From assembly GCA_973895155.1 (NCBI GenBank), contig OZ316899.1, positions 519,573 to 583,572 on the forward strand: a stretch of DNA of 64,000 nucleotides, written 5' to 3'. The notes under the pieces were generated by a model. The model was not told the origin of the DNA. It saw only the letters and a list, made by a program, of their open reading frames with translations, and ran no database searches. Within the stretch, counting starts at the first letter, position 1, and every line of letters begins with the position of its first letter. Positions 27,750 through 61,000 of this stretch are shown here, piece by piece. Position numbers and translations under genes: made by a program. The DNA comes from Marsupella aquatica (lineage: Eukaryota > Plantae > Marchantiophyta).

Positions 27750-28915
27750 CAATGACCAGTTTTCCTCATCATCAAGTGGTTGCACCTTTGAACATTGTGG
27801 GATATGGAAGAGATGTACTGGGCTACAAAGGGCCCACAGTAATACTCTCGTGCAGTTGGCACGATTGATCTGGATGACTTCATCCAAGAGTTTGATACGT
27901 GGTGCGATATGCAGACATTGCATAACGTCACGTTGTTTACCCCTTTCATGGCATGGAATGGATTATTTCAGCATTTGGAAGGGCCACCCATGGATGACTA
28001 TCATGAGTTTTGGAAGGCTCATTTGGTGGAGATTAAGACATGGAGGTAGCATTGAGCGCCTAATTATGTGTCTATCATCTATGACACTAGTGCGACTGCC
28101 CAACCCATTGCCATAGTTGTTGCGTCTTCTAGCAACTTTAGCCAGAGTGGCACACCATCCACTAGTAGCACTCTAGCAGCATCCACCGCTACTCCTACTA
28201 GTGCGATTGTGTCAAGGACTAGAGCTACACCAACATTTAACCCTGTGGTAGAATTCTTTGAGGTGTTGAAGCAGAACCCTGATAAGTTGAAGGGTCTCCA
28301 AGAGTTTCAGCGCAAGATTGGAGAGAGTCTACGTGAGGCATACACTTATATGCGCAGATTGATCACTGTCACAAAGGGAGTGACAGAGGCCCAGACAGTC
28401 CAATTTTGGTATGCAATTCTGGACAAAGAATTGCGACGCAAAGTGAGAGATGTCACTCAACTTAGGGATGCAGATCCCACATTGACAGTTGTTTTTACAC
28501 TTGTTGAGCACATTGAGCTCAATATGGTGAATGAGAAAGTAGTGACTTCCGAATTTTCCAAGGAAGCACCAAAGGCTGCATCTACACCCACATCACAGCC
28601 TATTCACGTAAGAGCCAGAGGGAGAAGCCCACTCCACGGGAATCTACCAGTCAGAGACCTGTGTCATCCTATGTTGGACAACAATTAGGATGTTGGACCT
28701 GTGGTGGGGACCATGTGCAACAATATTGCCCTGATCATAGAGGGTCAGGAGGGGCCTCAACACCTGATCAGTGGCAGTGTGATCATTGTGGTGCTCTTGG
28801 ACACACCAAGGATAGGTGTTTCTCACTCCATCCTAAGTTACAAAAAGGAGGACAACGCACACATGATCAGGGAAGAGGAGGTAGAGGTGGTGGTCGTGGC
28901 CGAGGTATGCCACAT
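27750..28915 (+). pseudogene. gag: gag remnant of another LTR retroelement (D), interrupted by CACTA-1; resumes in frame at 38477
   Basis: DLDDFIQEFDTWCD..., FQRKIGESLREAY..., knuckles CWTCGGDHVQQYC and CDHCGALGHTKDRC; the reading frame continues ...GMPH|AGRQGGNVAL after removing the CACTA. Confidence 0.75.
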
Positions 28916-29725
28916 CACTAGTACATTTTAGGTACTTTTTCGATACTCAAAACATGCGTTTCTCAACGCGCCCGATACTAAACACAACGGAAAACGTCCG
29001 ATACTCCCAACTATGGAACTTCTGATACTACCAACATCGGACATTATTATCCGATAGGTTTTGTATTGAAAACGTTATCCAATACCCTGCATATCGGACA
29101 ATGTCCGAAACATCCTGTATCGCAAATTGAGAGCCGACATGTTTTTCAGACGTCCGATAATAATAGTATCAAAAGCTAATTCCGATAGGTTTGGTTTCGG
29201 ACATTTACCGATACAAGTCTTATCAAACATATTTTTGCAATACTAATTACAACGGAAATCATTTGCGAAGACTGAGGTATCAGTTACTGTCCGTTGAAAT
29301 TGCTATCGGACCCCTCCTCGGTTGCGGGCTTAAGCGTCCGATCTGTGGAGTATTGGATAGTGGCTTCCGATTGTTATAGTATCGGAATATCTGATCCTTG
29401 AGGATGGGAAGGGGTTTTTTGCTTTGGCAGTACTAATGTGTGTCCGATATGTTTCCGATGTTATTTGAATGGGATATGGTATGGGACTTTAGTGTTTTAC
29501 AATGTCTAGGTTGCATGGAATTAATGGATTTAGATATGGGGCATACTTTAAGCAATAGATATTTATACTGCATGAAATTGTGGACAATGAGAAAAATCGT
29601 AGAATACCGATAAAAAGATAGTGCCGGTAAAAATATACATGAAGATGGTGGGGTCTACAATTTATACTAACTCGTGGGGGGTATGTCTCTATCTTCCACT
29701 ACAACTACGTTGGGTCTCTCTTGGA

Positions 29726-32700
29726 CTATGGACCATGATTTGGGGATATACGGCATGACAATGGACCACTCGGGTCATTGGGATAGGGTAGGTAAAAGCA
29801 TTGCTCAAGGTGATGTGGGAAGGCAAAGGGATCTGAGGACCTCCAGTTGGAACTGATGACACTATTTGCGGATGTCTTCAAACGAGTAAAACCGCATGCA
29901 TCATCTTCACAAGTACAATTGTGGCCTACAAGATTCATCTTGAACCATTTGCACTTGAATACCACTTCCTCCAAAGTAGTATGTGCATGGTACTTCACTG
30001 TTAGGACCTCCTCAATCTTCCCATAATGGGTCACGGTGGAGCGAATGGGATTCATGTCTGACATGCTACTCTGGGAATCTTGGGTGAACCAACCCATCAC
30101 CCCACAATCCTGTGTAGCTGCCCTCTTCTCATCAAGTCATTCCACACGAAAATGTCTCCCCTGTGACCACATGGCAGTCCGAGTCGTGACTATAAGTAGT
30201 GGACCATGAACCAAGGTACAAAGTTTATCTGTCACGTTTGGGTAGTGTAATACACTCTCCCCGGTACCCACCAGGGCATCCACTTCTAACAACTTCTCCT
30301 TCATGTATGGGTGAAACTTGGGAAATAACCGTGGGCGTCGACTATTTTGCTTCTCCTCCTCATAAAATGTTGTCCACTCCCCGACAACCTCGGGTGAGTT
30401 ATACAACATAAATGTTTTGAGCTGTAAACACTCTGCTGAGCCTATGAGACGCTCTCCAGATGCCCCAGTGAGTCTATCATCCTCGTAGTCAGCCTCTCGT
30501 GCCGCCTCATCTATCCATCCCCTAGGAGCACTAGGATCTAGTGTGGCAACTATGTTTGTACAGTAAAACATACTCTCTGCTCCAAGATGACGCTCCGCAA
30601 TGCTACCTTCCACCCTAGCGCGATTAAAGACATATGACTTCATCACCCCCATATAACGCTCTACCCAATACATCCATCAACAATGTACTGGGCCTGCAAT
30701 TGCAACCTCGCGCACTAAATGTATGAGGAAATGAACCTGACCATCAAAGAATGAGGGAGGGAGTGCCTTCTCCAACTTGCAAACAACCTCTACTCCAAAT
30801 ATCTCCATAGCAGCAATGTCATCCTCTTGTACCTCCTTTTGACATACCCATCTTAAGAGCTTACCCAATGACCAAAGGGCATCACGAAGTTCCTCACTAC
30901 CCAATCCAATAATAGCAACTGGAAGAACATGTTCAAGCAACCGATGATAATCATGTGTCTTCAAGAAAGATGGCCATTTTGGAGAATCCTCCCCCCCAAA
31001 TGCCTTTCAAAGATTGGTACCATAACCTGTGGGAAACCTCATCAACCCAATACGTCTACAAAACTCAATGCGCTCTGCCCTTGTCAAAACCCAAGGAGGA
31101 TGGATGCTAGGGGGAGCACCAGGGGGGTCCAAAGATGGCCAAAAACCCAAAAGACCATGCATCCCCATCTCCTCACAACTTTCTCTCCAATTGTTATTTT
31201 TCTCCCCATATAGATGGTGAATCAATGATTTCCCCACATTCCCCTCAATGTGCATAGGGTCTAACAAGTGATTAATGGGCATATCTGACCAATATGGCAA
31301 TTGTGACAATGCAGACAAACGGGTCATGTCACATCTGAATAATGGTAATGGATCACTCGGATCCTGAACTCTCCCCCATACCTCTCTCCAATATGCTGGA
31401 TCCTTCCGCTGAGGTTGAGGAAGAATATCAGGTTGGCCCTCATCAGTATCATAAAGGAATGGATCACTCCTCCAAGGATGGTCTGGTGGAAGATATTTAG
31501 TATGACCAATGTAAACAATTTTTTGCAGAGTACTTGACTTGGGCCTGGCCACCCCCTCCAAATCGGGTCCACATGTAGAGCAAGCTCGATAGCCTGATGT
31601 TTGCAATCCAAAAACATATCCAAACCCTACCCAGTGCATAGAAAACACATTCATAAAATAAGGTTCATCAAGGCAAAAATCTGCATAATTGCAATTAAAT
31701 ACAAGGTTTAGGTACTAGAGGAAATAAGGGTTTACCATACCTGGTAAATCATGCATGGTCCACATAAGGATGGCCTTTAGAGTAAATACGCGGGATAAAC
31801 CTTCTGTGTTGTGACGTCCATCATAACAATCCACTCCTCTCCACAGTTGTATCAACTCATCAATCAATGGCTGCAAGTACACATCAATCTTTTTAACTTG
31901 CTTAGGACCCGGAATAATCATGGAGAGTAGTAGGTGACCTTTCTTCATGGCCATCCAAGGAGGGATGTTGTAGTTTGTCAACACTACTGGCCACACCGAA
32001 TATGGTTTGGCTTTTCTTGTCAATGCAAAAGGGCTGATACCGTCTGCTGCCAAACCTAGTCAAACATGTCGTGGGTCAATTTTGAACTCTCCCCATCTAT
32101 CCTCTACAAATTGATTGGCAGGAGAGTCAACCATCATCCGCATGGCACTAGAGGGTACAACCATATCAGAACGATTTTGTGAGTGCCATACCATCATCTC
32201 AGTCAACTCTGCACATCGGAATTGATGTCGCAATCGAGGGATAAGAGGAAAGTACCTCATAACCTTTTGCGGTACCTTCCCCGTCAACATGTCATCACGG
32301 TACCGTGGCTTCTGACATTTAGGACATGTAGTGGCATTTTCATGCTCACCCCTAAAAAGAATGCAATCATCCACACATGCATGTATCACCTCATACTTCA
32401 GGCCAATGACGTCAACACCCGTTTAGCCTCTTTCCAAGAGGCTAGTAATGCGTTGCCTACTGGCAAAATACGATCATGCAAGGTATGGAAAACATCATCC
32501 AAAAGTAGATTGCTTGCCCCATGTCTTTGCTGCAAGTTGAGCAACAACATTATTGATGAGAGCCGAGATAACCTACTCCCCTCGAATATGCGAGTACGGG
32601 CATGACGTTGCGCCTCCTCCCATTGCTTGTCTTGGGACCCCCTAGAAGGATGTGGATGACTAGTCCTTTCATGGGTTGAACCAATGTCCTCCAAACCAAT

Positions 32701-32907
32701 GTCATTGTGATCATCATAGAATTGGTCCATGAGCTCATCCATGGCCCTCTCCTCATCAAGATGGTCTTGGATAGGATCATCACCATCATGTCGTACCCCA
32801 TCCTCTTGCCTTTGCGGTTCATGCCCACGGTTGGCCACCATGGCCTCAACAAGGTGTTGTTGCATAGCTCGTGATATTACCCCAATATCAGGCGTTACAT
32901 ATTGATT
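29726..32907 (-). pseudogene. CACTA transposase (TnpD/Tnp2-type; Transposase_21 with downstream DUF4218/DUF4216-like regions), spliced and decayed
   Basis: IHACVDDCILF, YFPLIPRL, GLAADGISPF, WPVVLTNYNIPPW, PGPKQ, DLPG|FG intron, DPMHIEGNV, KTHDYH, PPSFFD, MYWVERYM. Confidence 0.9.
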
Positions 32908-33030
32908 CTATCATACAACATCAATTAATTAATCTCATCAACACATGCACTGTTGAACAACATCATTCTCATGTAAACATGTAAAATAAACTAACATATA
33001 TATATACATGTATGTAAGTCCAAGAAACTA

Positions 33031-33987
33031 TCATGGATGACAACGCAAGGACAATTTTGGTGCATCCCACTCATACTCACACAATAACTCCTCACCAGCT
33101 CTAATGGTCCTAACAGCTACTGTCATGATATGGTCGTCCATATGTTTCACAAAATATGGATGTCTAGGTGGACCAAACATTTGAATCCACTCTACATTAG
33201 CCTCCAAACCTCTATCTCTACCTGTGGTACTATTGATGTACCTTGCTAAATTACCATTCCGAATAGGGTCACCATCAATCATCCGGCAATGCCACGGCCT
33301 AGTGAAGTCCTCATCCGGGTCTGAGTCCATCCTCAATGCATACACACCCCAACTTGGGTGTTGACGCAACAAAATATTCCAACTCTTGGAGTTATATACA
33401 GCCCCAATGTAAGGAAAGAGGTGCTCTCCATCATAACCACGTCTCCATGGCTTTGGAGGGACCACAATATCCTCCAAAGCAAAAATACCATATCCTATAT
33501 CAGGACCAATAGAGGATGCCTTCACTATCCAAGGGCGACCCCATATCTGAACTGGTTCATCTGTAGGAATAAAATCTGGAAATTTGAAGAGACTTGGAGA
33601 AAAGTCCTTCAAAACTTCGGCAGCCCTACCAGTGAGATAGGATAGTCCAAACCTGCCCTCAACGCAAATATAATCTACGTTACCGGCTGGTCGATCACTA
33701 GTACCTAACACCTCCTCTTGGCTGTCTACCTGGTCCAGTGGTCCATACTGCCGTCTACGTCTACCAGATCGTGGTGGTGTACGTAGGACCCTAGTAGTCA
33801 CAACCTCGGGCCGAGAGACCGGTTCCCCCTCTACATGCTCATGTGTGGGCACGGGAGTGGGGATAGGAGCAGGTGGGCTAAGAGGCATCTGGGCAGGAGG
33901 AACTGCAAGCAACTCCCTAGCCCTTGCTAGAAACCCTTCCAACCACACAGCTTGAGGAACCAAAGGAGGTGGGGGCCTACGAGGCAC
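33031..33987 (-). CDS. SET-domain exon carried by CACTA-1 (open for 318 codons)
   Basis: SET motifs GYGIFALEDI, IDGDPIRNGNLARYINS and VAVRTIRAGEELLCEY; the ORF begins exactly at an AG acceptor (33988-33989). Confidence 0.85.
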   Translation of the reverse strand: MPRRPPPPLVPQAVWLEGFLARARELLAVPPAQMPLSPPAPIPTPVPTHEHVEGEPVSRPEVVTTRVLRTPPRSGRRRRQYGPLDQVDSQEEVLGTSDRPAGNVDYICVEGRFGLSYLTGRAAEVLKDFSPSLFKFPDFIPTDEPVQIWGRPWIVKASSIGPDIGYGIFALEDIVVPPKPWRRGYDGEHLFPYIGAVYNSKSWNILLRQHPSWGVYALRMDSDPDEDFTRPWHCRMIDGDPIRNGNLARYINSTTGRDRGLEANVEWIQMFGPPRHPYFVKHMDDHIMTVAVRTIRAGEELLCEYEWDAPKLSLRCHP

Positions 33988-34122
33988 CTATTTCAACACA
34001 CGTACAATGGTTTTACACAAATCAATAAATTAAGTAGTGGGATGTAAATGCAAGATAATTAAGCAATACCCTAAATTGGAATGCATATATGGAATGAATA
34101 GGGGACATAAACATATCTGTAC

Positions 34123-34353
34123 CTGGCTAGGCAAATACCCTGGCATATCACCCTCGTGGCAGCCATAGTTCTCGATGTGCTCACAAGTCTCCCACGCATG
34201 TCAAACCACAAGTCCCTTACATCTCACACACCAACAAGGTATGGGTCCTAGTGGAGCACGAGGACGATCTGGAGGAGGGGGTGGAGGAACCTCCCCCTTA
34301 GACGAGCTTGTGTCTGAGTCTGAATCTGACGTGGAACTATCAGAAGTAGACAT
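34123..34353 (-). pseudogene. First coding exon of the CACTA-1 SET/transposase locus (Ser-rich, Pro-rich, CWCVRC...C..H..YG motif); one in-frame TGA
   Basis: CAG|ATG TCT start; phase-0 donor CAG|GTACAG; a homologous fragment at 46051-46207 has CGA where this copy has TGA. Confidence 0.75.
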
Positions 34354-34671
34354 CTGCATGCATGAAGTACACTCATTCATGTAAGCTGCATAAAAGAAGA
34401 CAAGTGTTGGAGTATCAAAATAGAATTAATTAATGCATGACATACAAAAGTCCTGTTGTACCTCAATGATACCCGCGCTTTGCCAGCCTATTGTGTCGTA
34501 TTTTCTACACACAAGGTGTGGGACATCCAAAATCTCTGCATATGTGGGTGAGCATTTTGCTAATGAGCATACATAATCTGTAAGTGCGAAAGAGTGTAGG
34601 AAGAACACACCACATATAAAAAAATTCCAACATACAAATTAAGTGTAAATGATGCGGCTCGTGAAGCGGGG

Positions 34672-35376
34672 ACATCATACCTCCTGGATGCACGGTCTCA
34701 CACTATGCATAGTGCATTGTCCAAAACAAAACCTCCCTACCCCCTCACAAACATTGAACCACCCCTCCAAACGCAAGGTACTGTGCATCAAATCCAACAC
34801 AACCATTAGCCTAATATATGGAGGTTGAACCTTATCCTAAGAAAAGGTGTAACCTTATCCTAGTAAAACCCCATAACCCTAAGCCCATAAACCCCTCCAA
34901 AGAAATGATCCAAATAGCTTTCACCCAGAAATGGTTCGTACAAAAACTTCTTGTAGTATTTTGTCTATCATATATCATAGTATTGAGTTCCCATCACCAC
35001 AACCATCCCTAAACTTGCAAGGAACTTGCAAGAGGACATCATACCTCCTGGATGCACGGTTTCATGCATAGTGCATTGTCCAAAATCAAAACCTCCCTAC
35101 CCCCTCAAAAAAAGTTAACCACCCCTCCAAAAGCAAGGTACTACACATCAAATCCAAACACAAAGATTAGCCTAATGAAGGGGTTTAATATTATCCTAAC
35201 AAAAGGTATAATGTTATACTAATAAAACCTCTGCGTACACCCATAATCCCCTATAAAGAAATGAAACAAAAGGCTTTCACCCAAAAATGATTCATACAAA
35301 AAATTCTTGTAGTATTTTCTTGATCCTATATTACATATCATAGTATTGAGTTCCCATCACCACAACCACCCCTAAA
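34672..35376. repeat. Tandem duplication (~364-bp unit) upstream of the CACTA-1 first coding exon
   Basis: ACATCATACCTCCTGGATGCAC...CATCACCACAACC repeated at ~34672 and ~35036. Confidence 0.75.
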
Positions 35377-36128
35377 ACACCAAGACTCTATACACAATTG
35401 CATCATTAATTAGAGCCCAATATCTTAAGCATGCAAGACCATAGCTTATCAAAAACATTACATAGTCCGGTACAAACCCCAAAATTTGTTCTCCGCAACA
35501 AAGAAACTTGCAAGAGGTCCCTCTACATGGATGACACGTTCACTGTCCCGTTCACATATGTAGAGCCCTACAAAACTCGGATTCAAATATGAAAGCAAAT
35601 AATAACTCCAACCATTTGCCCTTACCCCATACAAAACCTAAATATCCTAAATTATACTCTAAACCCTCCAATACCATACCCAACCCAAATTCAAAACATT
35701 ATATTGGACCCCCTTTGGGAAAGCCAAGAGGTATCCGATATAACTTCATGAGGGGTCCGATGCAATAGGAAACGGGCCACACTTGGTAAATACACGGCCA
35801 CAAGAAAAGGACGAGGGGTCCGAAGCAGATAGTTTTGGAAAGTCCGATTGCGTGTCCGATACCTTTGGTTTCGCAAAGTCCTAAACAAAAAGAATCGGAA
35901 GCAGAAGGTTTTGTTTCGGAAAAATGAACCGATGCAGGTGCGAAGACCCGCGCGTCGGTCCTTGTTTCGCACTTGGTGTTTTTCAAATTTTTTGAAGCTG
36001 GATCAAGGAGGAGAGCTTGAAGGAGGAGGAGAGATGGAGGGGGCCGGGGGATCAGGTGGTGGGGGAGACCAAGGGGGATCAGGTGGTGGTGGAGATCAGG
36101 GGGACCGTCCCAGCCATACAATGAAGTT

Positions 36129-37634
36129 ATGAGGGACATTTTCGTGGCCAAGGCAGGGCTGAGTGTGGAGGACGCGGAGAGAGTAGTCCCACTCCTCCAA
36201 ACGCTGATTGATGCCTCTCGGCATGAGGCAGAGAAGACTGCTGCTGCAAGCATTGCAAGTGAGAAGGAGGCAAAGAAGAGGAAGATCGAAAGAGGCAAAG
36301 AGAGGCAAGAGGGATGCAGAGGAGACACTGTCTCCAAGAAAACGAGAGAAAAAGCTTTGAAAAGAAGCTAGGGCAATTGAGAAGGTGCGATTGGAGGAGC
36401 AGAGGTGAAAGGAGGCAGAGAGAGCTCTCAGGCCTGAGCTAGCTCTCAATTCGGGTGGTGGTCCATTGCCTAAGAGCTACCATCTATTCCGAAGCCAATT
36501 CAAGCAGGTGCTGAGGGCCAATTTGGGGCCACTGGATTACTGGGGCAAGAAGAAGGAGGAAGAGAGATTGAGAATCAGAGAGCAGGTGAAGGAACGGTTC
36601 AGGAATGGGGCCTACATTGAACGGGTCATCAATGGTTTAAGGTTACATTAGGGCTATGTAGGGTGGCTTGGTTTAGGGTAGGGCACGCTAATACTAGATT
36701 TGATATTAACCTGGCCTCTATGGTTTGGATCTTTAAATTTCAGGAGCGGGAGTATGGTCGCCCTATTGCGCCGTTGGAGAGGAATTTGGCAAAGATGGAT
36801 GGACCCCGCGCTCTAAAGCGCCACCTTGAGGATGAGTTGGGAGAGGTAAGTGTTCACCCTAGGGTGACATAATGTTTAAGGTTGTCATGAATTTGTTAGA
36901 GTTATGGTCGGGACCATTCATTCTAACCGCAATTAAACCCTATTGCGTAGGATGAGGAGGGGTCTGGGTCAGAGGAGTTGGACTCAAATTATGAGCAGGA
37001 TGCTGAGGCAGGGTTGGGGAGGGTGCCCACAGTCACCCCTACTCCTCAGGTCCGAGGTGTTGTTGCCCCATCTGGTGCCGTTGCCCCATCAACAGGGAGG
37101 GGTGGGTCACATGCTGTTGATGGTGTGGGCTCCCATCGCTCTGGAGCATCACGGGGTGCGGGGCCCAGGCACTCAGGGGGTAGTAGAGGTGATGGCATGG
37201 GACGAGGCCATCGCGTAGGAGTATCTGGTGCAGGTGGCCCTTCCCGACGAGGTAGTGGCGACGTGCCGGATGGTGGATCTAGAGGGCGCGCACCATCTCG
37301 TGAGTCTGGTGGGAGTACAGCACAACATGGGCCACCCACAAGATCTGTCGGTGCACCATCCCATCACTCTAGCAGGTCGGCGGGAGGAGCTGAGGCCTCC
37401 TTTCACTCTGCCGTGTCGGGGGTTGGTGGGACATCTACCTTGCCTGACCACCCTAGCGGTGCATCTAGTGGGTCAAGGTCTAGGCCTGCATCAGGCCAAC
37501 CCATGCCATCTGGTGAGCAGGTGGCTGCCACGGCTGTGGGCAGCCAAAGGGAGGAGGGCTCTCATGATGCTAGACCTGTACCCACCCTTCGTTCTCGCCC
37601 AAAGAAGAAGAAGGGACGCAACACACCTTTTTAG
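36129..37634 (+). pseudogene. Divergently oriented second gene of CACTA-1 (charged helical region, intron, Gly/Ser-rich tail ending in basic PKKKKGR)
   Basis: ORFs 36129-36371, 36466-36651, 36663-36872 and 36978-37634; donor GTAAGT near 36846 and acceptor near 36950; a positional counterpart exists in CACTA-2. Confidence 0.55.
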
Positions 37635-40252
37635 AGGTTAGTTGCATTTAGGTGGGTATCTAGTGCTAGACAGCTTTGATTAGACACTCACTAGGAGGTA
37701 CCTTGTATATAGCTAGTGTAGTCTCTAGTCAAAGCTCTCTTTAAATCTTCTATCGTGCCATCACGACCAGGAGGGGTCTACCCGGTAGGCCTAATCCATT
37801 TTGTACATATTGGGGTGATCCCCTTTTTGAATATGATATTTTGACCTCGTGTTTATAGCATTATCTTTGGTTCCTAATTGGTGTATGTCACCTTCAACCC
37901 CAAACCAATACCCAAACCCCCAAAAAACCACCCATGAAACCCTGTATTCCACCCCCAGAACATTTGATAATCCATTGCAAGTCCGTTACCATCCGTATTG
38001 GTAATATAGCAGTGTCCAATGCTGCTGCCTTCAAACTTTCCCATCCCCAACGCATTGGACCCCTCCTTCAAGGTTCCCATCTTAAATCTATCGGATAGTC
38101 CGATACAAAAAATAACACACTTTCCGTTTTGATAAATAACGCAATGTCCGATACATTCAATGACATATTGGATATGAAATCTATCGGACATCCCGATTTA
38201 AATAGGATCGGACATAGGAAATCGTCGTGTGCCGTCGCGTGTTAGTTATCCAATTTGTTTTACATTGGACCTAAAATATCCATAACACGTTACAATGGAA
38301 CTTCCGTTGCCCAAAATATCGGAAAGTCCGATGGAAGTCCGATGGTCGATATGCGATGGTTTGGGCATTGCAAAGTGCGTTGGGAATTGCATCGGATGAT
38401 AGAAATTTTTGCGTCAATTTTCCTGAAGGGATCCGATGTAAATCCTATCGAATAAAGGCCCAAAAATGTACTAGTGCATGCAGGGAGACAGGGAGGTAAT
38501 GTTGCTCTTACTATGATCACAGATCCTAAGGACGCTAAGATTGTTCAATTGAAGCAACAACTAGCTGCTATGGCTAGTTCTTAGGTGAGACCTACTTCTG
38601 GTGATGGGGCTTCTACATCCTATAGAGCTTCCACATCTTATGGGGTTGATGGAGATCTTGCCACCATGGGATTCATGTGTGGCATTGCACACATTGATGC
38701 ATCAGCAGCTTTGACGCGTGAGGCAACAAAAGCCCTTGAACCCAGAGGAGGAGTTGTGGAGTTGGATTCTCAAAGAGGGATGTTTGGCATCAAACCAGGC
38801 ATCAAACAAAGCTTTCCAAGTCTTTTACATTGTCATAGACAATTAAGACTGCCTCTAAGAACCCGATTTGGACAAACCCTGGTGTGGGTAAGTTGGCATA
38901 ATCACATGATGTTGCAACAGGGATGACAAGTACCTTGTTGGGGGCAGCTACCACCATAGTGCGCACCCCATTATTTTCAGTGATAGATATGTTGACATTT
39001 GGGGTTGGTCCAACTAATGTGTCGTATGATAGGAAGAACAAAAAGTAGTAAACCCTAAACGGAATTTGATCCCTTAAAGAACAGATTCAAAGTAAATTGA
39101 ATGATTTAACAAATTTGGATGGTTTAGAGCTCTTGCTCTAAAACTTTCAATCTCAGACAAAGAATAAAATTAACAAAACACAAGGAAAAGATAACTCTTG
39201 AGTTATAAATCCAAAAGGAAGAAGAAATCTATGATTAGATTGGTTTTAACATGTTAATGTCACTCCTTCAGAAAGGACTATGGACTCAATATAGACAAAA
39301 TTAAACCTATCAAATCAGATTCTTTGTTTTCTACTGGAATCATAAAGATGAAAAAAATAAAAGGATTCTCTTGCTCACCAAATCCACAATACATTTCTGG
39401 TTGATTTATTGAGATATGTATTAAAATGCCGTTAACATGGTTTGATTGTCGACAATACACAATTTAAATCAAACTCTAATACATATGCCAAAGTAAATCA
39501 ACGGTACTATGATACTCTGAAGATGGAATTTTGCTCCTTCAATTCAATCATCTATTCTCAAATTAGCTGACGAATCTTGACACAACAAGCAAGCTTAGCA
39601 GTGAATTTGATAAGAATCTCAAAAGGTTGTGATTAAAAATTCAGTCACTAGAAGGAATCTCCTGAATTCATTCACAATTGATAACACATGCTTGACTTCC
39701 ATACAAGACATCCTTGTTAAAATGGAAGGTGGAAAACTTATTCAGAATCTCTTTCTAAATAAAGTGTGTCCCCCCAAAGATGGATAAACTGAGGGCTCTT
39801 ATAGGTGTAAACTTCTAATAAAGGAAATTGAAGGGGTGTAACTTTTCAAATCTCAAATATCCAAAAGGGTAGTCTAAAAAAAGATGGAGTGTGAAAAATG
39901 CAGTGGATGCTTCAGAAAGCATCATGTTTGAGGCGGAAGCTTTACAAAGCGTCGATGTTTTTGGTAAAACAAATAAACAGTGACTTTATCAGAATTTTAA
40001 CTTCTAAACTAAAAGTCAGAATGAGGTGAAACTTTTCTAAGGTACTCTACTACATATAATCTCTATGCTAGCAAAGTTTCAAACTTGTCTAAGAGCTCTA
40101 TGTGCTTCAAATAAATTGGTAAAAGTGTCGCAATGCTATAACAAGGGAAAACCAATTTTTTTCTCAGTGTCACAAGTTTAGTGGACGTGAGGCGTCCAAA
40201 ATACAAAGGAACTTTTGTGGACGCTGCAAAAAGTGTCCAAAATTTGCATGTC

Positions 40253-45953: not shown

Positions 45954-46050
45954 CAACGGCCCTGGCCCAAATCACCAAAGCCAAAGCCCAGACAGCCTTC
46001 GCCACACAAGCCGGAGCCGGGAAGGATGTGGAGATCGCGCGGCTTGCTTT

Positions 46051-46207
46051 TGATAGTTCCACATTGGATACAGAGTCAGACACAAGCTTGTCTGAGGAAG
46101 AGGTTCCTCCACCCCCTCCTCCAGACCCTCCTCGTGCTCGGCCACTAGGACCCATACCTTGTTGGTGTGTGAGATGTAAGGGACTTGTGGTCCGACATGC
46201 CTGGGAG
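46051..46207 (+). pseudogene. Orphan fragment of the CACTA-1-type first exon
   Basis: DSST..SDTS..EEEVPPPPPPD...PLGPIPCWCVRCKGLVVRHAWE, near-identical to ~34195-34345 reversed. Confidence 0.8.
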
Positions 46208-55918: not shown

Positions 55919-56131
55919 ATGTCTTCATCCTCTACAACTTCCACCACATCGGACTCCTCCTCCTCCTGAGCCTGAACCAAGTGTACGTCGACCTAGTGGT
56001 CCGCCACGTCAACTATGTGGTTGTAAAAATGTGTGGGGATGATTGTCCAGAAGTCATATGTATGTGCGGACCACATTGTAAGATATGGACAACATCGAGG
56101 TCTTACACTGGGAGCCTCTTCATCCCATATG
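55919..56131 (+). pseudogene. First coding exon of the CACTA-2 SET/transposase locus
   Basis: CAG|ATG TCT start; Ser-rich, PPPP, CGCK(K)CVG...VCADHIVRYG motif (two small frameshifts); phase-0 donor ATG|GTGAG. Confidence 0.7.
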
Positions 56132-56239
56132 GTGAGTTGTAAAGTTACCTTATTTGTTTCTAATTTTATAAATCTACCTAGCATGACTTAGGTTTTGGGA
56201 AGTTGTTCACATTTACTTTGTTGGATTTTTTTCATATAG

Positions 56240-57054
56240 GTATCCACTAGGCCTACACCCACGGCACCAACACCCTATGTTCCCTCACAAGGAGTTCTAG
56301 ATGCTATAGGCTTGGCCCTTTCACAAGCTTTTTGTCTAGTTGCAACAGGGCAAGGAAGTGTTGGGACAGTTGAGGGTGTTGGTATTGTTACAAGAGGGAA
56401 AAAAGATCTAAAAGGAATCCGAGAGGGGAAGTTGATCAGTATACCTGTAGGGTTGATGGTAGGTGGGGACCTTGTATGTTCACAGGGAAATGTGTGCCTC
56501 TCATAAAGGATTGGAATCCTGATTGCCTTGGTTTGCCATGTGATATAACCTATGGTGAGGAGATAGAGGTTTGGGGAAGGCGTTGGGTTGTCAAAAGCTC
56601 TACACTAGGGGAGAGACATGGGTATGGAGTTTTTTCTTGTGAGGACATCATTGTGGATGATATGGGTGGAAAAGGGCGGTCTCCAGATGGACCAACATTG
56701 TTCCCATATGGTGGACCCATTTACAAGAGGAGACATTGGAACATGATCCTTGTACAACACCCTGAGTGGAAGACTTATGCATTGGATATGGATACTTTTG
56801 ATGGCTGCACTAGAAAGTATAGTGAACAACGTATAATTGATGGAGATCCCATCCGTAGTGGGAATATAGCCGGTTTCATAAATAGTACTGTGGGGTCTCG
56901 GCCCAAGCGTAGGCAAAATTGTGAGTGGGTTTTTGTTGATGGTCCCCCTCCAGCACCATATGGACAGAGATATCATCATGACCATTGTCTGGTTGTGGCT
57001 ACAAGGACCATTAAGGCAGGAGAGGAGTTGTTTACTCATTATGCGTGGGATTAG
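56240..57054 (+). CDS. SET-domain exon of CACTA-2 (SET core 56476-57054 open; one frameshift in the linker)
   Basis: GYGVFSCEDI, IDGDPIRSGNIAGFINS and VATRTIKAGEELFTHY; acceptor AG at 56238-56239. Confidence 0.82.
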
Positions 57055-57212
57055 GCTTAGTTATTTTAGGGACTCTCATGTATTACATGTTCATTCATTG
57101 CGTGTGAACATATTTTTGTAAGCTACCCATGTCCTTTTCATATTATTAATAACATATTTGTCTCACTATTATTTGGAGTTTGATTGCAAATGCTTTATTG
57201 TGTTGTCCATAG

Positions 57213-58094
57213 AATGTGCGACCTAGTCAAGATATGTTGCCAAGGAGGTTGAGAGCTACATATGATGAAATGGGCATGCCACGAGACAGAGAAACATCAT
57301 CAACAGATTCCTCATCCAGTGACAATGACATTGAAGGTTCTGATGAAGGGGCACCTAGGACAGATTATGAGGTCATGCAGGACCAGGAGACAGCCATGGA
57401 TGACTTCATGACAGATTGGTTTGGTGTGGACGTTGATGGTGAAGGACGTGGACCACCCAATGAAGGAGCTCCCCCACCAAATGCTGCACATGACCCCCAG
57501 CCTCAACATACACCATAAGGTCAACAACAATGGGAAGAAGCGGAGGCACATGCTAGAACACCTATTTATGGGGGTGCTCGCTTGAATAGACTCTCGATCT
57601 GCCATCTTGGCATTGATGAACCTTCAGGCAAAACACAAGGCAAGCAATGCCCTACTATCGGATTTGTTTGCAATTTGTCATGACCTCATGTTACCCAGTG
57701 ACAATGTATTGCCAGGAACTTGGAAGGAGGCAAAGAGAGTTTTATCATCCATTGGTATGGAATATCATATCATTCATGCTTGTGTGAATGACTACATCCT
57801 ATATCATGAGACCAATGCCAACAGGACTGAGTGTCCAATTTGTCATGAGCCTCGATACGAGGCCAACATGTTGACCTCAAAGGTGCCCAGGAAAGTTGTC
57901 TGTCGGTTTTCCATTATTCCTCGATTGTTGCACATGTATCGATGTTCTGACTTGGCAGAATTGATGGTATGGCATAAGACACATCGATCAGAGGCCGGTG
58001 TCATGCGGTTGCCAGTTGACTCCCCTGCTCACAAGCATGTGGAGTCACAATGGCCAGAGTTTGCCAATGACCCTCGTCATGTGAGGTTGGGGTT
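57213..58094 (+). pseudogene. CACTA-2 transposase, N-terminal part (truncated by retroelement insertion)
   Basis: Starts at an AG acceptor (57211-57212); LMNLQAKH, IIHACVND, FSIIPRL, VDSPAHKHV and DPRHVRLG align with the CACTA-1 transposase. Confidence 0.88.
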
Positions 58095-61000
58095 TGTGGT
58101 GCGTCCCGTGGCTCCGTAAACCCAAGAAACCCCCCAGCTCAAGCCGATTCCCGCAGGTTTCGCGCTTGGCGAGGCCGTTTCCGCGGCTTAGCGGCATGGG
58201 ACGCTGCTAACCTTCTACTATTACTATTAACATTTTACACACATATACTGGACAGATCCTTCATCGGGTCATGAGATACGTAGCTGGCCTAATCTAGGCC
58301 TTCCCTCGTCTTCCCCTCCGTCTTGTTAGGTATGTTTGGATTCCGCCGCCGGAATGATCCCCAATAGGCTTGGTTAAGCCGCTAAGACCTCTCTCAGCTC
58401 GACACATCCAACTCTCACTCCCCTGCTTACTTTCCTTCCTTCTGGTTGATGTGGGCACTCTTCACACAAGTTAATGCGACACACAAATAGCAAAATGACT
58501 CATTCTGACTGAGTCATACCATGCACTTGCCATACAAACAGTACATCTCATACACAAGCTCTGCGAACTAAGCCGTGAGGCCAACTCTATTCAGCTCTTA
58601 GGCATGAGGAAACATGAATATACACAAGGGTCACTGTATGACTAACCGAGAGCTTCTCGTACTACTTGATCCCAACCCGGCTAGTGCAAACTAAAAACTT
58701 GCTAAAGAAGAGGCCCTGAGCTCCCCGCTGCCCAGGTACTTATCCTGGTAGTGGATCCGCCTAATTCTTTGCAGCGTAAGCCTAATCTACCTAACAGTAA
58801 TCTACTTGCCCGGATCTACCTATGTACAGCAAGGCAGGAGCACAAGTGTTGCTCCTACCAGTGGAACCACAATCCCACTAAGCTAAGTGTCAGGGTCCTG
58901 ATCCTAATCCTAAACTTGGAGATCAGCGCCCACCCTGCCCACTCACGCCTCCTCCCTCCACGTCCGCCCTTCCTAAAAGGAACGACGCCCTTGCACCGTC
59001 ACGACACCGGTGGTGGATCCTCAATGGACGCCCCCAACGCTTCCTCCTCAGCCACTGTCGTAGGTTCGTTTTCTGACAGATTACCTGCCCTTGACTGAGT
59101 CAACTATCCATCGGCCTGACTGGGTCCACCATCGGCGTCGGCATCGGCTCGGGAATCATTCTCGGCTACGGCCTCAGCCTCGACTATGGTCTCCCCGGCC
59201 TGCTCAAGAGGCGGATCTGGGATACCGGCCTCATTACTGAGTAGTTCGGCTTGGGCCGCACCACCCCCACCTGTGATGATAGCGGGATCTATTGCCGTAT
59301 TCATGCCGGAGGATGGTGCTGGGTCTACTTCCTTGGTCACCACGACTTGTGGAGTCGGATTACTCCTTGACCCTGAAGGTTTTCGCTTCTTCTTCTTTTC
59401 TGGTTCGGCAGCTGGTCCCTTCCCCTTCTCACTTACTTCCGGCACTGGTGCAGGTGGCGCGGCTTTTTCTTCGGCCAGTACCACTCCTGGTAACTTGGTT
59501 GCCCCAATTGGAGTTGGGCCTGATGAAGACAAGCACTTAAATACTGCGGCTTGTTTCTTCAGCCGCTCCGTTTGGTTGTCGGCCCGTCGCTGGAGGTTCT
59601 CCATCTTCCTCGTGATTTCCTCCAACTCCTCCTGGGTCTCATCCAGGTCCTTGCGCGCCTCCTCTAGTTCCTTCTGGGCTTCCTCCCGTTCTTTTTTCAA
59701 GGTAGTCCTCTCCTCCCGGGTTGCTCTTAGCTCCTTGTCGAGCTCTGCAATGATGACAGACTCCATCTGGTTCATCTTGGCGTAAGTCTGATCGAGCATC
59801 TCGTCCTTCTCCCTTAGGTCGGCCTTGAAGCTGGCCGTCAGGGATGCAAGCTCCTGCTACAGCGCCATAATCCCTTGATAGGATTTTCCTAACTCGGCCT
59901 CCTTCTGCTCAAGGGCTCCGCGGATTTTCTCGAGCTCCCCCTTCAACGCCCATTCCTTTCTTTGGGTCTCCGCCATGGCCCGGCTGTTGGCTGTTATGTG
60001 GGCCTCCTCTGTATTCCTCAGCTCTCGCTTCCACTTCTCCCTCTCTTTGATCGTATCGGCCAACTCTCCCTGTGTCTGAGTCAGTTTATCCTTGATATTC
60101 TGATTATCAGCCTGCGCGGTGTCCAACTGCCCCTGCATGATGTTCAGCTCATGCCGTTTAATCCGCAGTTCATCTTGGGCTTTCTTGGCCGCCCTTAGAT
60201 CTTCAATCTCGGCTTCCATCCTCCTAAGCCGCCGAATGACCTCGTCCTTCTTGCTTCTCTCTAAAGCCACCGCTTCTTCTAATTGGTGCTTCTCCAACTG
60301 CTCCCTATGGAAAAAGGGTCCTACCTCCAACTCCTCTCCAAAGATGCCGAGCGCAAGTTCCCCACACATCTCACCATACTCCATGGCTCTATTCTTAGCG
60401 TAGGTGGAGTAAGTAGAAGTGATCGGCATCGCCCATCACGGCCTCTGCTCCCAAGCCGTCTTGCGGATCTCTTCAATCGTGGCTAGAGGTTTGCTTCCTT
60501 TTTCGGCTAGCCGCCTGATGTCCTCCGGCCAATCTCCTCCTGGTAAATCCTTTTCCCTAGCCAGGGCTGCCTCCTCTTCCTGCCTGATTCGCTCCTGAAA
60601 TTCCTGCACCGTCTGTTTTATGCCGTCAAAGCTCGGGGGAGCAACATCTGGTGGGGGAGACTCAGGGCTACTCTGCTGGTTGGGGTCCCCTCGTACTACC
60701 CTTGGAAGTGTGGGGACAAACCGGCCACAGGTCCTTACTCCTGGAACATGATGGTCCGACCCATAGCCGGAGTTATCATGGCTGCAGTCCTCCATTGCCT
60801 CCTCTATTTCTTGGACGTCCGGCTTCTCCCTCTCCTCTTCGTCGGTAGGAGCTTCAGGCAATTCTGCCTCAGATTCAGAGCTTGAGACTCCCACATACAT
60901 TCGAACACCTGGCTTGGATTCCGTCCTGATTCTCTCCTCGTCTCCAGCAAAGGGGTTTTCTCTTGTGAGCCGGTGTAGGCCTACCTCTGGAGTGGTGTTC

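What the first reader, a model, noticed from the sequence alone, without database searches (positions are those of the whole stretch)
32907..34353. One Cys/His first exon can splice either to the SET exon or to the transposase
Seen in both elements: CAG|ATG-TCT start, then a Ser/Pro-rich exon with a C-x-C-x2-C...H..YG motif ending at a phase-0 donor (34123; 56131). A phase-0 acceptor opens the SET exon (33987; 56240), which ends in a stop. A second phase-0 acceptor opens the transposase frame (32907; 57213), which begins at the acceptor rather than at an ATG. Known: En/Spm makes TnpA/TnpD by alternative splicing, and CACTA transposases often start with a Cys/His transposase-associated domain. 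Inference: exon skipping yields two proteins with the same N-terminal Zn-type module, which could target or couple the SET protein to the transposase or element DNA.
Basis: partly seen in the sequence, partly recalled or inferred. Interest (0 to 1): 0.8.

Follow-up and report, generated by a model that had tools for sequence, protein, structure and literature searches.

The report
Liverwort CACTA transposon sharing one start exon
A cut-and-paste (CACTA) transposon family of liverworts appears to make both its transposase and a SET-domain methyltransferase-like protein from one shared zinc-finger start exon; comparison of copies supports this, but no RNA shows it and both copies in this window are dead.

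Summary
The coordinates are right. At 34353-34123 (-) an ATG exon with a CxCxxC...H..YG module ends at a phase-0 GT donor. One phase-0 AG (33987) opens a SET-domain frame that ends in a stop. A second AG (32907) opens the tnp2-type transposase frame.

- Copy 1 has a private TGA in exon 1, four TGA stops and a frameshift in the transposase.
- Copy 2 has stops and frame breaks in exon 1, the SET exon and the transposase exon.

The same layout recurs in Calypogeia fissa, Riccia sorocarpa and unnamed liverwort-like contigs. In all of them, the SET and transposase frames open exactly at the acceptor. Neither has a conserved Met (first Met at codon 8-137). The residues before that Met are under purifying selection (dN/dS about 0.2-0.3).

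Exon 1 aligns in register with the Cys3-His core of the Transposase-associated domain (hhalign 81%, E 1e-5; Pfam below cut-off). A SET-less relative carries this module and the transposase in one ORF.

So exon 1 is most likely the transposase's own first exon, and the SET exon sits in its first intron. Two gene models use the exon 1-SET junction. The exon 1-transposase junction is inferred only, because no RNA data were reachable.

I rate it a new variant of known kinds (En/Spm splicing; SET-carrying HarbingerS and Plavaka). Other first readers noted the same thing elsewhere in this genome.

The parts
28916..38476 (-). Element 1: a complete but decayed CACTA transposon of 9,561 bp. Its genes are on the minus strand.
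   Evidence: 17-nt termini CACTAGTACATTTTWGG at both ends, against 0.28 matches expected by chance. Both ends are flanked by CAT. Both subterminal regions carry TCCGATA/TATCGGA repeats.
28916..28932 (+). 3' terminal inverted repeat, with the 3-bp target-site duplication CAT at 28913-28915
38460..38476 (-). 5' terminal inverted repeat, with the 3-bp target-site duplication CAT at 38477-38479
34462..34535 (-). Candidate non-coding leader exon, bounded by AG and GT and ending GGTATCATTGAG|GT
   Evidence: The same AG...GGTATCATTGAG|GTA block lies upstream of exon 1 in L001 and L003. This is an inference from the sequence alone.
34123..34353 (-). Exon 1: ATG, a Ser/Asp-rich stretch, a Pro-rich stretch, then the Zn module PCWCVRCKG..H..E..EHIENYG.HEGD. 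It ends at a phase-0 donor CAG|GTACAG. This copy alone has a TGA at 34203-34201.
33988..34122 (-). Intron 1 (135 nt, GT..AG)
   Evidence: About 40-48% identity between copies, against 73-77% for the Zn part of exon 1 among the three closest copies
33031..33987 (-). SET exon: 318 open codons that begin exactly at the acceptor, followed by a TGA stop. The first Met is at codon 34.
   Evidence: Pfam SET at 29.6 bits against a cut-off of 22.4. Homologues are 47-78% identical. GxG and ELxxDY-type motifs are conserved. dN/dS is 0.29-0.34.
32908..33030 (-). 123-nt AT-rich spacer between the SET stop and the transposase acceptor
   Evidence: Unconserved, 24-43% identity between copies. It is 123-445 nt long in the other copies.
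31736..32907 (-). Transposase exon 2. It opens at the acceptor GATAG|AAT and carries an acidic region and the start of Transposase_21. It is broken by a frame change near 32401-32407 and a TGA at 32062-32060.
29726..31609 (-). Transposase exon 3: the rest of Transposase_21, then DUF4218 and DUF4216. It has three in-frame TGA stops (31009, 30679, 30139).
   Evidence: tblastn with the 648-aa ORF of L003 gives 58% identity in one frame. Stops are and Pfam hits.
55919..56131 (+). Copy 2, exon 1. It is decayed: a stop after 16 codons and at least one frameshift inside the Cys motif.
56240..57054 (+). Copy 2, SET exon (frameshifted, with many stops)
57213..58116 (+). Copy 2, transposase exon from the acceptor CCATAG|AAT. 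It has a stop at codon 102, and similarity ends at 58116.

Best explanation
This is a liverwort CACTA (En/Spm-type) transposon family. Exon 1 is the transposase gene's own first coding exon and carries the ATG and a shortened Cys3-His zinc module of the Transposase-associated type. A SET-domain exon lies inside the transposase's first intron.

One primary transcript starts in the roughly 4-kb 5' region and passes through at least one leader exon. It can then take two routes:
1. Exon 1 joins the near acceptor. This gives a protein of about 395 aa (Zn module plus SET) that ends at the SET stop. The RNA either ends in the short AT-rich spacer or carries the transposase exons as an untranslated tail.
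2. The SET exon is skipped and exon 1 joins the far acceptor. This gives the canonical CACTA transposase: Zn module, acidic region, Transposase_21, DUF4218, DUF4216.

What is shown: the element's structure, the domains, the conserved phases and open frames, the selection on each segment, and the likeness of exon 1 to the transposase N-terminus.

What is inferred: both splice events as RNA, how the SET isoform ends, and any role of the shared module. Possible roles are bringing the SET protein to the element's DNA or chromatin, or to the transposase.

The two copies in this window are dead relics of the family.
For: 1. Element 1 is a bona fide CACTA. It has CACTA termini, a 3-bp CAT duplication and subterminal repeats, and the tnp2 domain set.
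2. The same layout occurs in window copies 1 and 2, L001 (Calypogeia fissa), L010 and L003 (Logan DNA contigs) and L014 (Riccia sorocarpa). Exon 1 is 70-95 codons long and ends in phase 0. Its length is a multiple of three in 5 of 6 copies despite the length differences, and it is fully open in L010, L003 and L014.
3. Both downstream frames open exactly at the acceptor and are closed just upstream.
4. The first Met lies at codon 15-137 in the SET exon (five copies with a readable frame; copy 2 is frameshifted) and at codon 8-81 in the transposase exon (all six copies). It is not conserved. In Riccia it falls after conserved residues.
5. The peptide before the first Met (NQFVxPDxxVLSRAxRQH) is conserved in further relatives.
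6. dN/dS is 0.12-0.18 for the Zn part of exon 1, 0.29-0.34 for SET and 0.18-0.28 for the first 14-22 transposase codons. The intron and spacer are 24-48% identical.
7. Exon 1 against 30 canonical Transposase-associated N-termini gives hhalign probability 81% and E 1.2e-5, with CxCxxC...H...G in register. PF13963 is the only Pfam hit of an intact exon 1.
8. Many related CACTA transposases carry CPCxxC near residue 40, the same position as CWCxxC in exon 1.
9. A SET-less relative (P0035, locus L136) has a CxCxxCKGxxVV module and the transposase in one ORF.
10. Two gene models splice exon 1 to the SET exon at exactly this junction: P0001 of C. fissa and P0013 of R. sorocarpa.
Against: - No transcript evidence for either junction in this genome. 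The four runs that hold the sequence cover introns and exons alike and contain contigs up to 185 kb, so they are DNA. They show no joint at the proposed boundaries.
- No protein in the databases joins exon 1 directly to the transposase exon.
- One C. fissa model (P0181) starts the transposase at the internal ATG.
- The Pfam score of exon 1 for PF13963 is below the curated cut-off (15.2 against 27.7 bits).
- dS is about 1 or more, so the dN/dS values are rough, and the segments are short.
- How the SET isoform terminates is unknown. No conserved donor follows the SET stop.
Confidence: 0.6

Rival explanations
1. There are two separate genes. Exon 1 plus the SET exon is an accessory gene of its own, and the transposase is transcribed or translated independently, starting at an internal ATG of its first large exon.
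For: The C. fissa annotation has a SET gene model with the exon 1 tail (P0001) and, at another copy, a transposase model that starts at the internal Met (P0181). In-frame ATGs lie 7-14 codons inside the transposase exon in both window copies and L001.
Against: - That Met is not conserved. It is Ile in L010, and the first Met is at codon 23, 25 and 81 in L010, L003 and L014.
- The residues before it are conserved and under purifying selection.
- The frame is closed right at a well-formed acceptor.
- The spacer is only 123-225 nt in the intact copies and is unconserved, which is short for a promoter plus leader.
- Without exon 1 the transposase would lack the Zn module that its canonical relatives carry.
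Confidence: 0.2
2. A single fusion protein (exon 1, SET, transposase) is made by splicing out the SET stop codon, as in SETMAR.
For: Riccia sorocarpa gene models P0019 and P0011 join SET-like sequence to the transposase. P0013 joins exon 1, the first half of SET and the transposase.
Against: - The SET frame ends in a stop in every copy where it is intact (win1, L001, L010, L003).
- The P0013 model comes from a copy whose SET frame is broken, and it uses a non-conserved internal donor.
- No conserved strong phase-0 donor exists inside the SET exon. The best candidates match 5 of 9 consensus positions, against 6-8 for the exon 1 donors. All lie before the ELxxDY motif, so a fusion would lose the catalytic end.
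Confidence: 0.08
3. The SET exon is a passively captured host gene fragment (Pack-CACTA style) with no function for the element. The frame compatibility is inherited by descent from one ancestral accident.
For: CACTA elements do capture host fragments (PMC6379663, title and abstract seen). Both window copies are decayed.
Against: - The SET frame is kept open, with dN/dS about 0.3, across copies as distant as Calypogeia-type and L003-type elements (dS of 1 to 2.9) and is recognisable in Riccia.
- It always sits in the same intron in the same phase, while exon 1 varies in length from 70 to 95 codons.
- The sequence search found only this family, and no host SET gene was among the eight hits.
Confidence: 0.07

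Closest known systems
Maize En/Spm (CACTA): TnpA and TnpD made from one promoter by alternative splicing
   Same: Same superfamily. It has CACTA termini, a 3-bp duplication, subterminal repeats and a tnp2-type transposase. In both, one transcription unit would give two proteins by choice of acceptor, and one coding region lies inside the first intron of the other. The En/Spm facts are from my own knowledge.
   Different: In En/Spm the transposase ORFs lie in the first intron of tnpA. As far as I recall, the shared first exon there is not a shared protein module. Here the accessory (SET) exon lies in the first intron of the transposase gene, and the shared exon would encode about 77 residues with a zinc module. 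No Transposase_24/TnpA-type ORF was found. Splicing is not shown here.
DNA transposons carrying a SET-domain accessory gene: HarbingerS (Kojima and Jurka 2014, Repbase Reports, cited in PMC12730594), Helitron captures, and red-algal Plavaka PAG2 (bioRxiv 10.1101/2025.02.11.637652)
   Same: A cut-and-paste or rolling-circle transposon encodes a SET-domain protein besides its transposase. Plavaka belongs to the EnSpm superfamily.
   Different: Those are described as separate accessory genes. PAG2 also has a DNA methylase domain. Here the SET frame has no start codon of its own and would borrow the transposase's first exon. The host is a land plant (liverworts) and the transposase is the canonical plant tnp2 type. 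I found no paper describing SET-carrying CACTA elements in liverworts.
SETMAR (primate SET exons spliced to an Hsmar1 mariner transposase)
   Same: SET and transposase sequences are linked through splicing. This is from my own knowledge; PMC8616336 mentions host-transposase fusions with SET domains.
   Different: SETMAR is a domesticated host gene that makes one fusion protein. Here the element is a mobile multi-copy family, and the two domains are predicted to be in alternative products, not one.
Canonical plant CACTA transposases with an N-terminal Transposase-associated domain (PF13963)
   Same: CxCxxC near residue 40, followed by His and Gly/aromatic positions, then an acidic linker and Transposase_21.
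   Different: Exon 1 lacks the first 30 or so residues of the domain (MDxSWM...GV..F). It has CWC instead of the invariant CPC and falls below the Pfam cut-off. In this family a SET exon separates it from the rest of the transposase.

Membership tests
CACTA / En-Spm superfamily | Terminal inverted repeats beginning CACTA | tested here: met
   CACTAGTACATTTTWGG at 28916 (+) and 38476 (-). Matches found: 3. Expected by chance: 0.28.
CACTA / En-Spm superfamily | 3-bp target-site duplication | tested here: met
   CAT at 28913-28915 and at 38477-38479
CACTA / En-Spm superfamily | tnp2-type DDE transposase (Transposase_21 with DUF4218 and DUF4216) | tested here: met
   PF02992 at 113.8 bits and PF13960 at 37.8 bits. 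PF13952 scores 25.3 bits, below its cut-off of 30.6. The frame is broken by four stops and one frameshift.
CACTA / En-Spm superfamily | Subterminal short repeats | tested here: met
   Many TCCGATA/TATCGGA units within about 500 bp of both ends. They were read by eye and not counted against a control.
En/Spm-type two-product alternative splicing | Transcripts that share 5' exons and differ in acceptor choice | not testable with these tools
A junction pattern scan of metagenome contigs gave only chance hits.
SET-domain methyltransferases (PF00856) | Match to the SET profile above the curated cut-off | tested here: met
   29.6 bits against 22.4, E 9.4e-7, residues 209-305
SET-domain methyltransferases (PF00856) | AdoMet and catalytic motifs (GxG, NH(S), ELxxDY) | tested here: inconclusive
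   GxG(L/I/V)(F/Y)A and EEL(L)C(D/E)Y are conserved in the family. The NHS motif reads (G)YINS, so Asn is kept and His is not. The PDB profile search gave only marginal SETD8/KMT5A matches (E about 0.9). The AlphaFold model was too poor to use (pLDDT 38).
Transposase-associated domain (PF13963) | Match to the profile above the curated cut-off | tested here: not met
   The intact exon 1 of L003 scores 15.2 bits against a cut-off of 27.7 (E 0.025) and covers profile positions 33-63 of 74. It was the only family reported. The window's two exon 1 pieces gave no hit.
Transposase-associated domain (PF13963) | Cys3-His core in register with canonical members | tested here: met
   hhalign of the exon 1 alignment A2 against 30 canonical N-termini (A3) gives probability 81%, E 1.2e-5 and 33 aligned columns. 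These include CxCxxC and the H...G positions.

The most novel reading that the evidence does not exclude
The shared 77-residue zinc exon is an address label. By giving the SET protein the same DNA- or partner-binding module as the transposase, the element sends its own lysine methyltransferase to its own ends or to the transposition complex. There it would write a chromatin mark, or methylate the transposase, to control its own silencing or activity. The splice choice would then act as a built-in switch between transposing and managing chromatin.
Probability: 0.2. Interest if true: 0.85.

Novelty: new variant of a known kind. Interest (0 to 1): 0.6.

Why it matters
Transposons that carry their own chromatin enzymes are rare. 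They are the clearest cases of elements manipulating host silencing; VANDAL anti-silencing factors and the TET/JBP genes of fungal transposons are examples.

If RNA confirms the shared start exon, this would be a land-plant element with a compact design. It would couple a methyltransferase-like protein to its transposase through a common N-terminal zinc module and regulate the ratio of the two by splicing.

Liverworts silence many transposons with H3K27me3 as well as with H3K9 and DNA methylation (PMC8616336). A transposon-borne SET protein in this lineage is therefore a testable candidate for interfering with, or exploiting, such marks.

For annotation, it means that the "SET domain-containing" and "transposase" gene models in liverwort genomes may be isoforms of one transposon gene.

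Tried and rejected
- RNA evidence. The look-up of sequencing runs (kind rna) returned four runs of unknown kind. When laid on 32480-38476 they covered introns, spacer and the 5' region evenly, held contigs up to 185 kb, and showed no joint at the proposed intron boundaries. They are DNA. A degenerate exon 1/transposase junction pattern scanned against metagenome contigs gave 120 or more hits. None encoded a relative. The pattern was too loose.\n- search for related loci with the SET alignment in genome contigs. That collection holds only bacteria and archaea, and it returned four distant bacterial SET proteins, which are of no use here.\n- Protein searches for an exon 1-transposase fusion. None was found in this family. 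Most relatives are ORF calls on genomic contigs that start at internal or alternative start codons.\n- Structure. The AlphaFold2 model of the SET protein from the 9-row alignment had mean pLDDT 37.7, so I ran no fold search.\n- Pfam on ORFs of the 4-kb 5' region and of flanking ORFs: no families.\n- SET-transposase fusion through an internal donor: considered and set aside.\n- Whether the intact SET frame in an otherwise broken copy 1 is meaningful. At the observed rate of about 5 stops per 1,100 codons, an open 318-codon frame has a chance of about 0.24, so it is not evidence.
Full report
**What is in the window**

Element 1 is a complete CACTA transposon at 28916-38476 (9,561 bp).
- Both ends carry the 17-nt terminus CACTAGTACATTTTWGG, against 0.28 matches expected by chance.
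- Both ends are flanked by the same 3-bp CAT.
- Both subterminal regions are full of TCCGATA/TATCGGA units.

Its genes run on the minus strand.
- A candidate leader exon lies at 34535-34462. It is bounded by AG and GT, and its end GGTATCATTGAG|GT recurs in relatives.
- Then comes CAG|ATG at 34353.
- Exon 1 is 231 nt. It encodes a Ser/Asp-rich stretch, a Pro-rich stretch, then PCWCVRCKGLVV-HAWETCEHIENYGCHEGD. It ends CAG|GTACAG at 34123 in phase 0.
- After a 135-nt intron, the acceptor GAAATAG| opens a 318-codon frame at 33987. This frame is a SET domain (PF00856, 29.6 bits against a cut-off of 22.4) and ends in TGA at 33033-33031.
- 123 nt later the acceptor GATAG| at 32907 opens the transposase frame. 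It runs through an acidic region, Transposase_21 (113.8 bits), DUF4218 and DUF4216.

Copy 2 (55919-58116, plus strand) has the same order of parts.

Both copies are pseudogenes.
- Exon 1 of copy 1 has an in-frame TGA at 34203-34201.
- Laying four public runs on the element showed that nearly all family contigs read G at 34203(+), which makes the codon CGA.
- A stray 160-bp exon 1 fragment at 46050-46207 also reads CGA. The stop is therefore a private CpG-to-TpG change.
- The transposase of copy 1 has four further in-frame TGA stops (32062, 31009, 30679, 30139) and a frame change near 32401-32407.
- In copy 2, exon 1 stops after 16 codons. It shows the Cys motif only in another frame, with its third Cys restored only if one base is missing from an A run. 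The SET exon is frameshifted, and the transposase exon has a stop at codon 102.

Only the SET frame of copy 1 is intact. At the observed stop density this has a chance of about one in four, so I draw nothing from it.

**Relatives**

- The SET protein's relatives in the search were few and all of this family (47-78% identity).
- The best named hit is a Calypogeia fissa gene model, P0001.
- The surrounding locus L001 is a CACTA element with a similar terminus (CACTACTACATTATTGG). It has the same exon 1, SET exon and transposase acceptor.
- Further copies came from Logan DNA contigs (L003, L010), from a JGI metagenome contig (L013) and from Riccia sorocarpa (L014, L015).
- The family therefore spans both major liverwort classes. 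Its nearest relatives are in Calypogeia.

**Comparative test of the splicing model**

I compared six copies: window copies 1 and 2, L001, L010, L003 and L014.
- Exon 1 varies from 70 to 95 codons, yet it ends in phase 0 at a good GT donor. Its length is a multiple of three in five of the six copies, and it is fully open in L010, L003 and L014.
- The SET frame opens exactly at its AG and is closed just upstream, usually by the acceptor's own TAG.
- The first Met of the SET frame lies at codon 15, 26, 32, 34 or 137 in the five copies with a readable frame. In Riccia that is inside the SET domain.
- The transposase frame likewise opens exactly at its AG. Its first Met lies at codon 8, 15, 15, 23, 25 or 81.
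- The ATG seen 14 codons in for copy 1 and L001 is ATA in L010.
- The peptide before that Met, (N/D)(Q/E)F(V/G)xP(D/S)xxxL(S/P)R(A/R)xRQH, recurs in L013 and in several database ORFs.

The identity profile across window copy 1, L001 and L010 rises at each proposed exon boundary. It falls in the intron and in the spacer.

Pairwise dN/dS among these three copies:

| Segment | dN/dS |
|---|---|
| Zn part of exon 1 | 0.12-0.18 |
| SET exon | 0.29-0.34 |
| First 14-22 transposase codons | 0.18-0.28 |

The intron and spacer are only 24-48% identical. dS is near 1 and the segments are short, so these figures are indicative rather than precise.

Taken together, neither downstream exon has a start codon of its own that selection has kept. 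Both have coding sequence that starts at a splice acceptor. The only conserved ATG exon upstream is exon 1.

**Is exon 1 the transposase's own N-terminus?**

It scores 15.2 bits against a cut-off of 27.7 and covers profile positions 33-63. The window's own pieces give nothing.
- I made a profile-profile comparison of five exon 1 sequences (A2, six rows; the window's exon 1 entered as two pieces). The target was the N-termini of 30 canonical relatives taken from the representative search (A3). It gives probability 81% and E 1.2e-5, with CxCxxC and the later His and Gly in register.
- Dozens of related CACTA transposases have CPCxxC near residue 40, where exon 1 has CWCxxC.
- A SET-less relative from a metagenome (P0035, locus L136) has KCTCTDCKGFKVV...H and the transposase in one continuous ORF.

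Joining exon 1 to the 32907 exon therefore restores the usual CACTA transposase architecture. Without it, this family's transposase would lack that module.

**What is not shown**

No RNA was reachable.
- The four runs that hold the sequence are DNA-like. They give even cover of introns and the 5' region, hold contigs up to 185 kb, include contigs that run unspliced from SET into exon 1, and show no joint at the intron boundaries.
- A junction pattern scan of metagenome contigs gave only chance hits.
- No database protein joins exon 1 directly to the transposase exon.

Public gene models disagree with one another:
- P0001 and P0013 use the exon 1-SET junction.
- P0181 (C. fissa) starts the transposase at the internal ATG.
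- P0011 and P0019 (Riccia) fuse SET-like sequence to the transposase. They look like models forced through decayed copies, but I did not inspect their loci.
- P0013 does come from a copy with a broken SET frame and uses a non-conserved internal donor.
- Inside intact SET exons there is no conserved strong phase-0 donor. All candidates lie before the ELxxDY motif.

How the SET isoform ends is open: polyadenylation in the short AT-rich spacer, or retention of the downstream exons as an untranslated tail.

**The SET protein**

- The family keeps GxG(L/I/V)(F/Y)A and EEL(L)C(D/E)Y. The NHS motif reads YINS, so Asn is kept and His is not.
- The PDB profile search gave only marginal SETD8/KMT5A matches over the C-terminal motif.
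- The ESM Atlas look-up places it among plant "SET domain-containing" clusters.
- The AlphaFold model from nine sequences was unusable (pLDDT 38).

Whether the protein is active, and on what substrate, is unknown.

**Comparison with what is known**

- Two products from one CACTA transcription unit by acceptor choice is the En/Spm TnpA/TnpD design (my own knowledge). Here the nesting is reversed, and the shared exon would be a protein module.
- SET-domain accessory genes are known in HarbingerS, in Helitron captures and in red-algal Plavaka elements of the EnSpm superfamily.
- CACTA elements normally have a transposase and an ORF2 of unclear function (PMC4158355).
- I found no paper on SET-carrying CACTA elements in liverworts or on a SET exon sharing the transposase's first exon.
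- Two other first-stage notes in this genome report the same arrangement at other places. They are unchecked and do not count as independent support.

**Verdict**

The alternative-splicing reading is the best explanation at about 0.6. It is well supported by comparative sequence evidence, half supported by gene models, and unsupported by RNA. I rate it a new variant of known kinds, of moderate to good interest.

Noticed in passing
window 46050-46207 (+): An isolated fragment of about 160 bp of exon 1 (DSS...PLGPIPCWCVRCKGLVVRHAWE) lies inside unrelated sequence. It has CGA where copy 1 has its TGA stop. It may have been picked up or left behind by another element.
   Followed up: partly
window 36000-37520, and L001 6473-8530: The roughly 4-kb 5' region between the terminus and exon 1 is the same size in the window element and in the Calypogeia fissa element. 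tblastx shows blocks of 45-61% identity. The best chain is on the strand opposite to the transposase, where C. fissa has a 532-aa gene model without any Pfam family. This could be a second, antisense element gene, or only low-complexity similarity.
   Followed up: partly
L014 7300-7500 (Riccia sorocarpa) and L013 1200-1300: In these copies the spacer between the SET stop and the transposase acceptor contains several units of the element's own subterminal repeat (TGTCGGAA/TATCGGAA; TCCGAT/ATCGGA). These are candidate binding sites inside the alternatively spliced region. The window copy lacks them.
   Followed up: no
window 29726-34353 (-): All five premature stops in copy 1 (one in exon 1, four in the transposase) are TGA. 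The exon 1 stop is shown to derive from CGA. This fits decay by deamination of methylated CpG.
   Followed up: partly
window 32480-38476, runs X1-X4: Hundreds to more than a thousand short contigs per run lay on the element at 90-100% identity, with many shared differences from this copy. The family is therefore multi-copy in two coded organisms (A and B).
   Followed up: no
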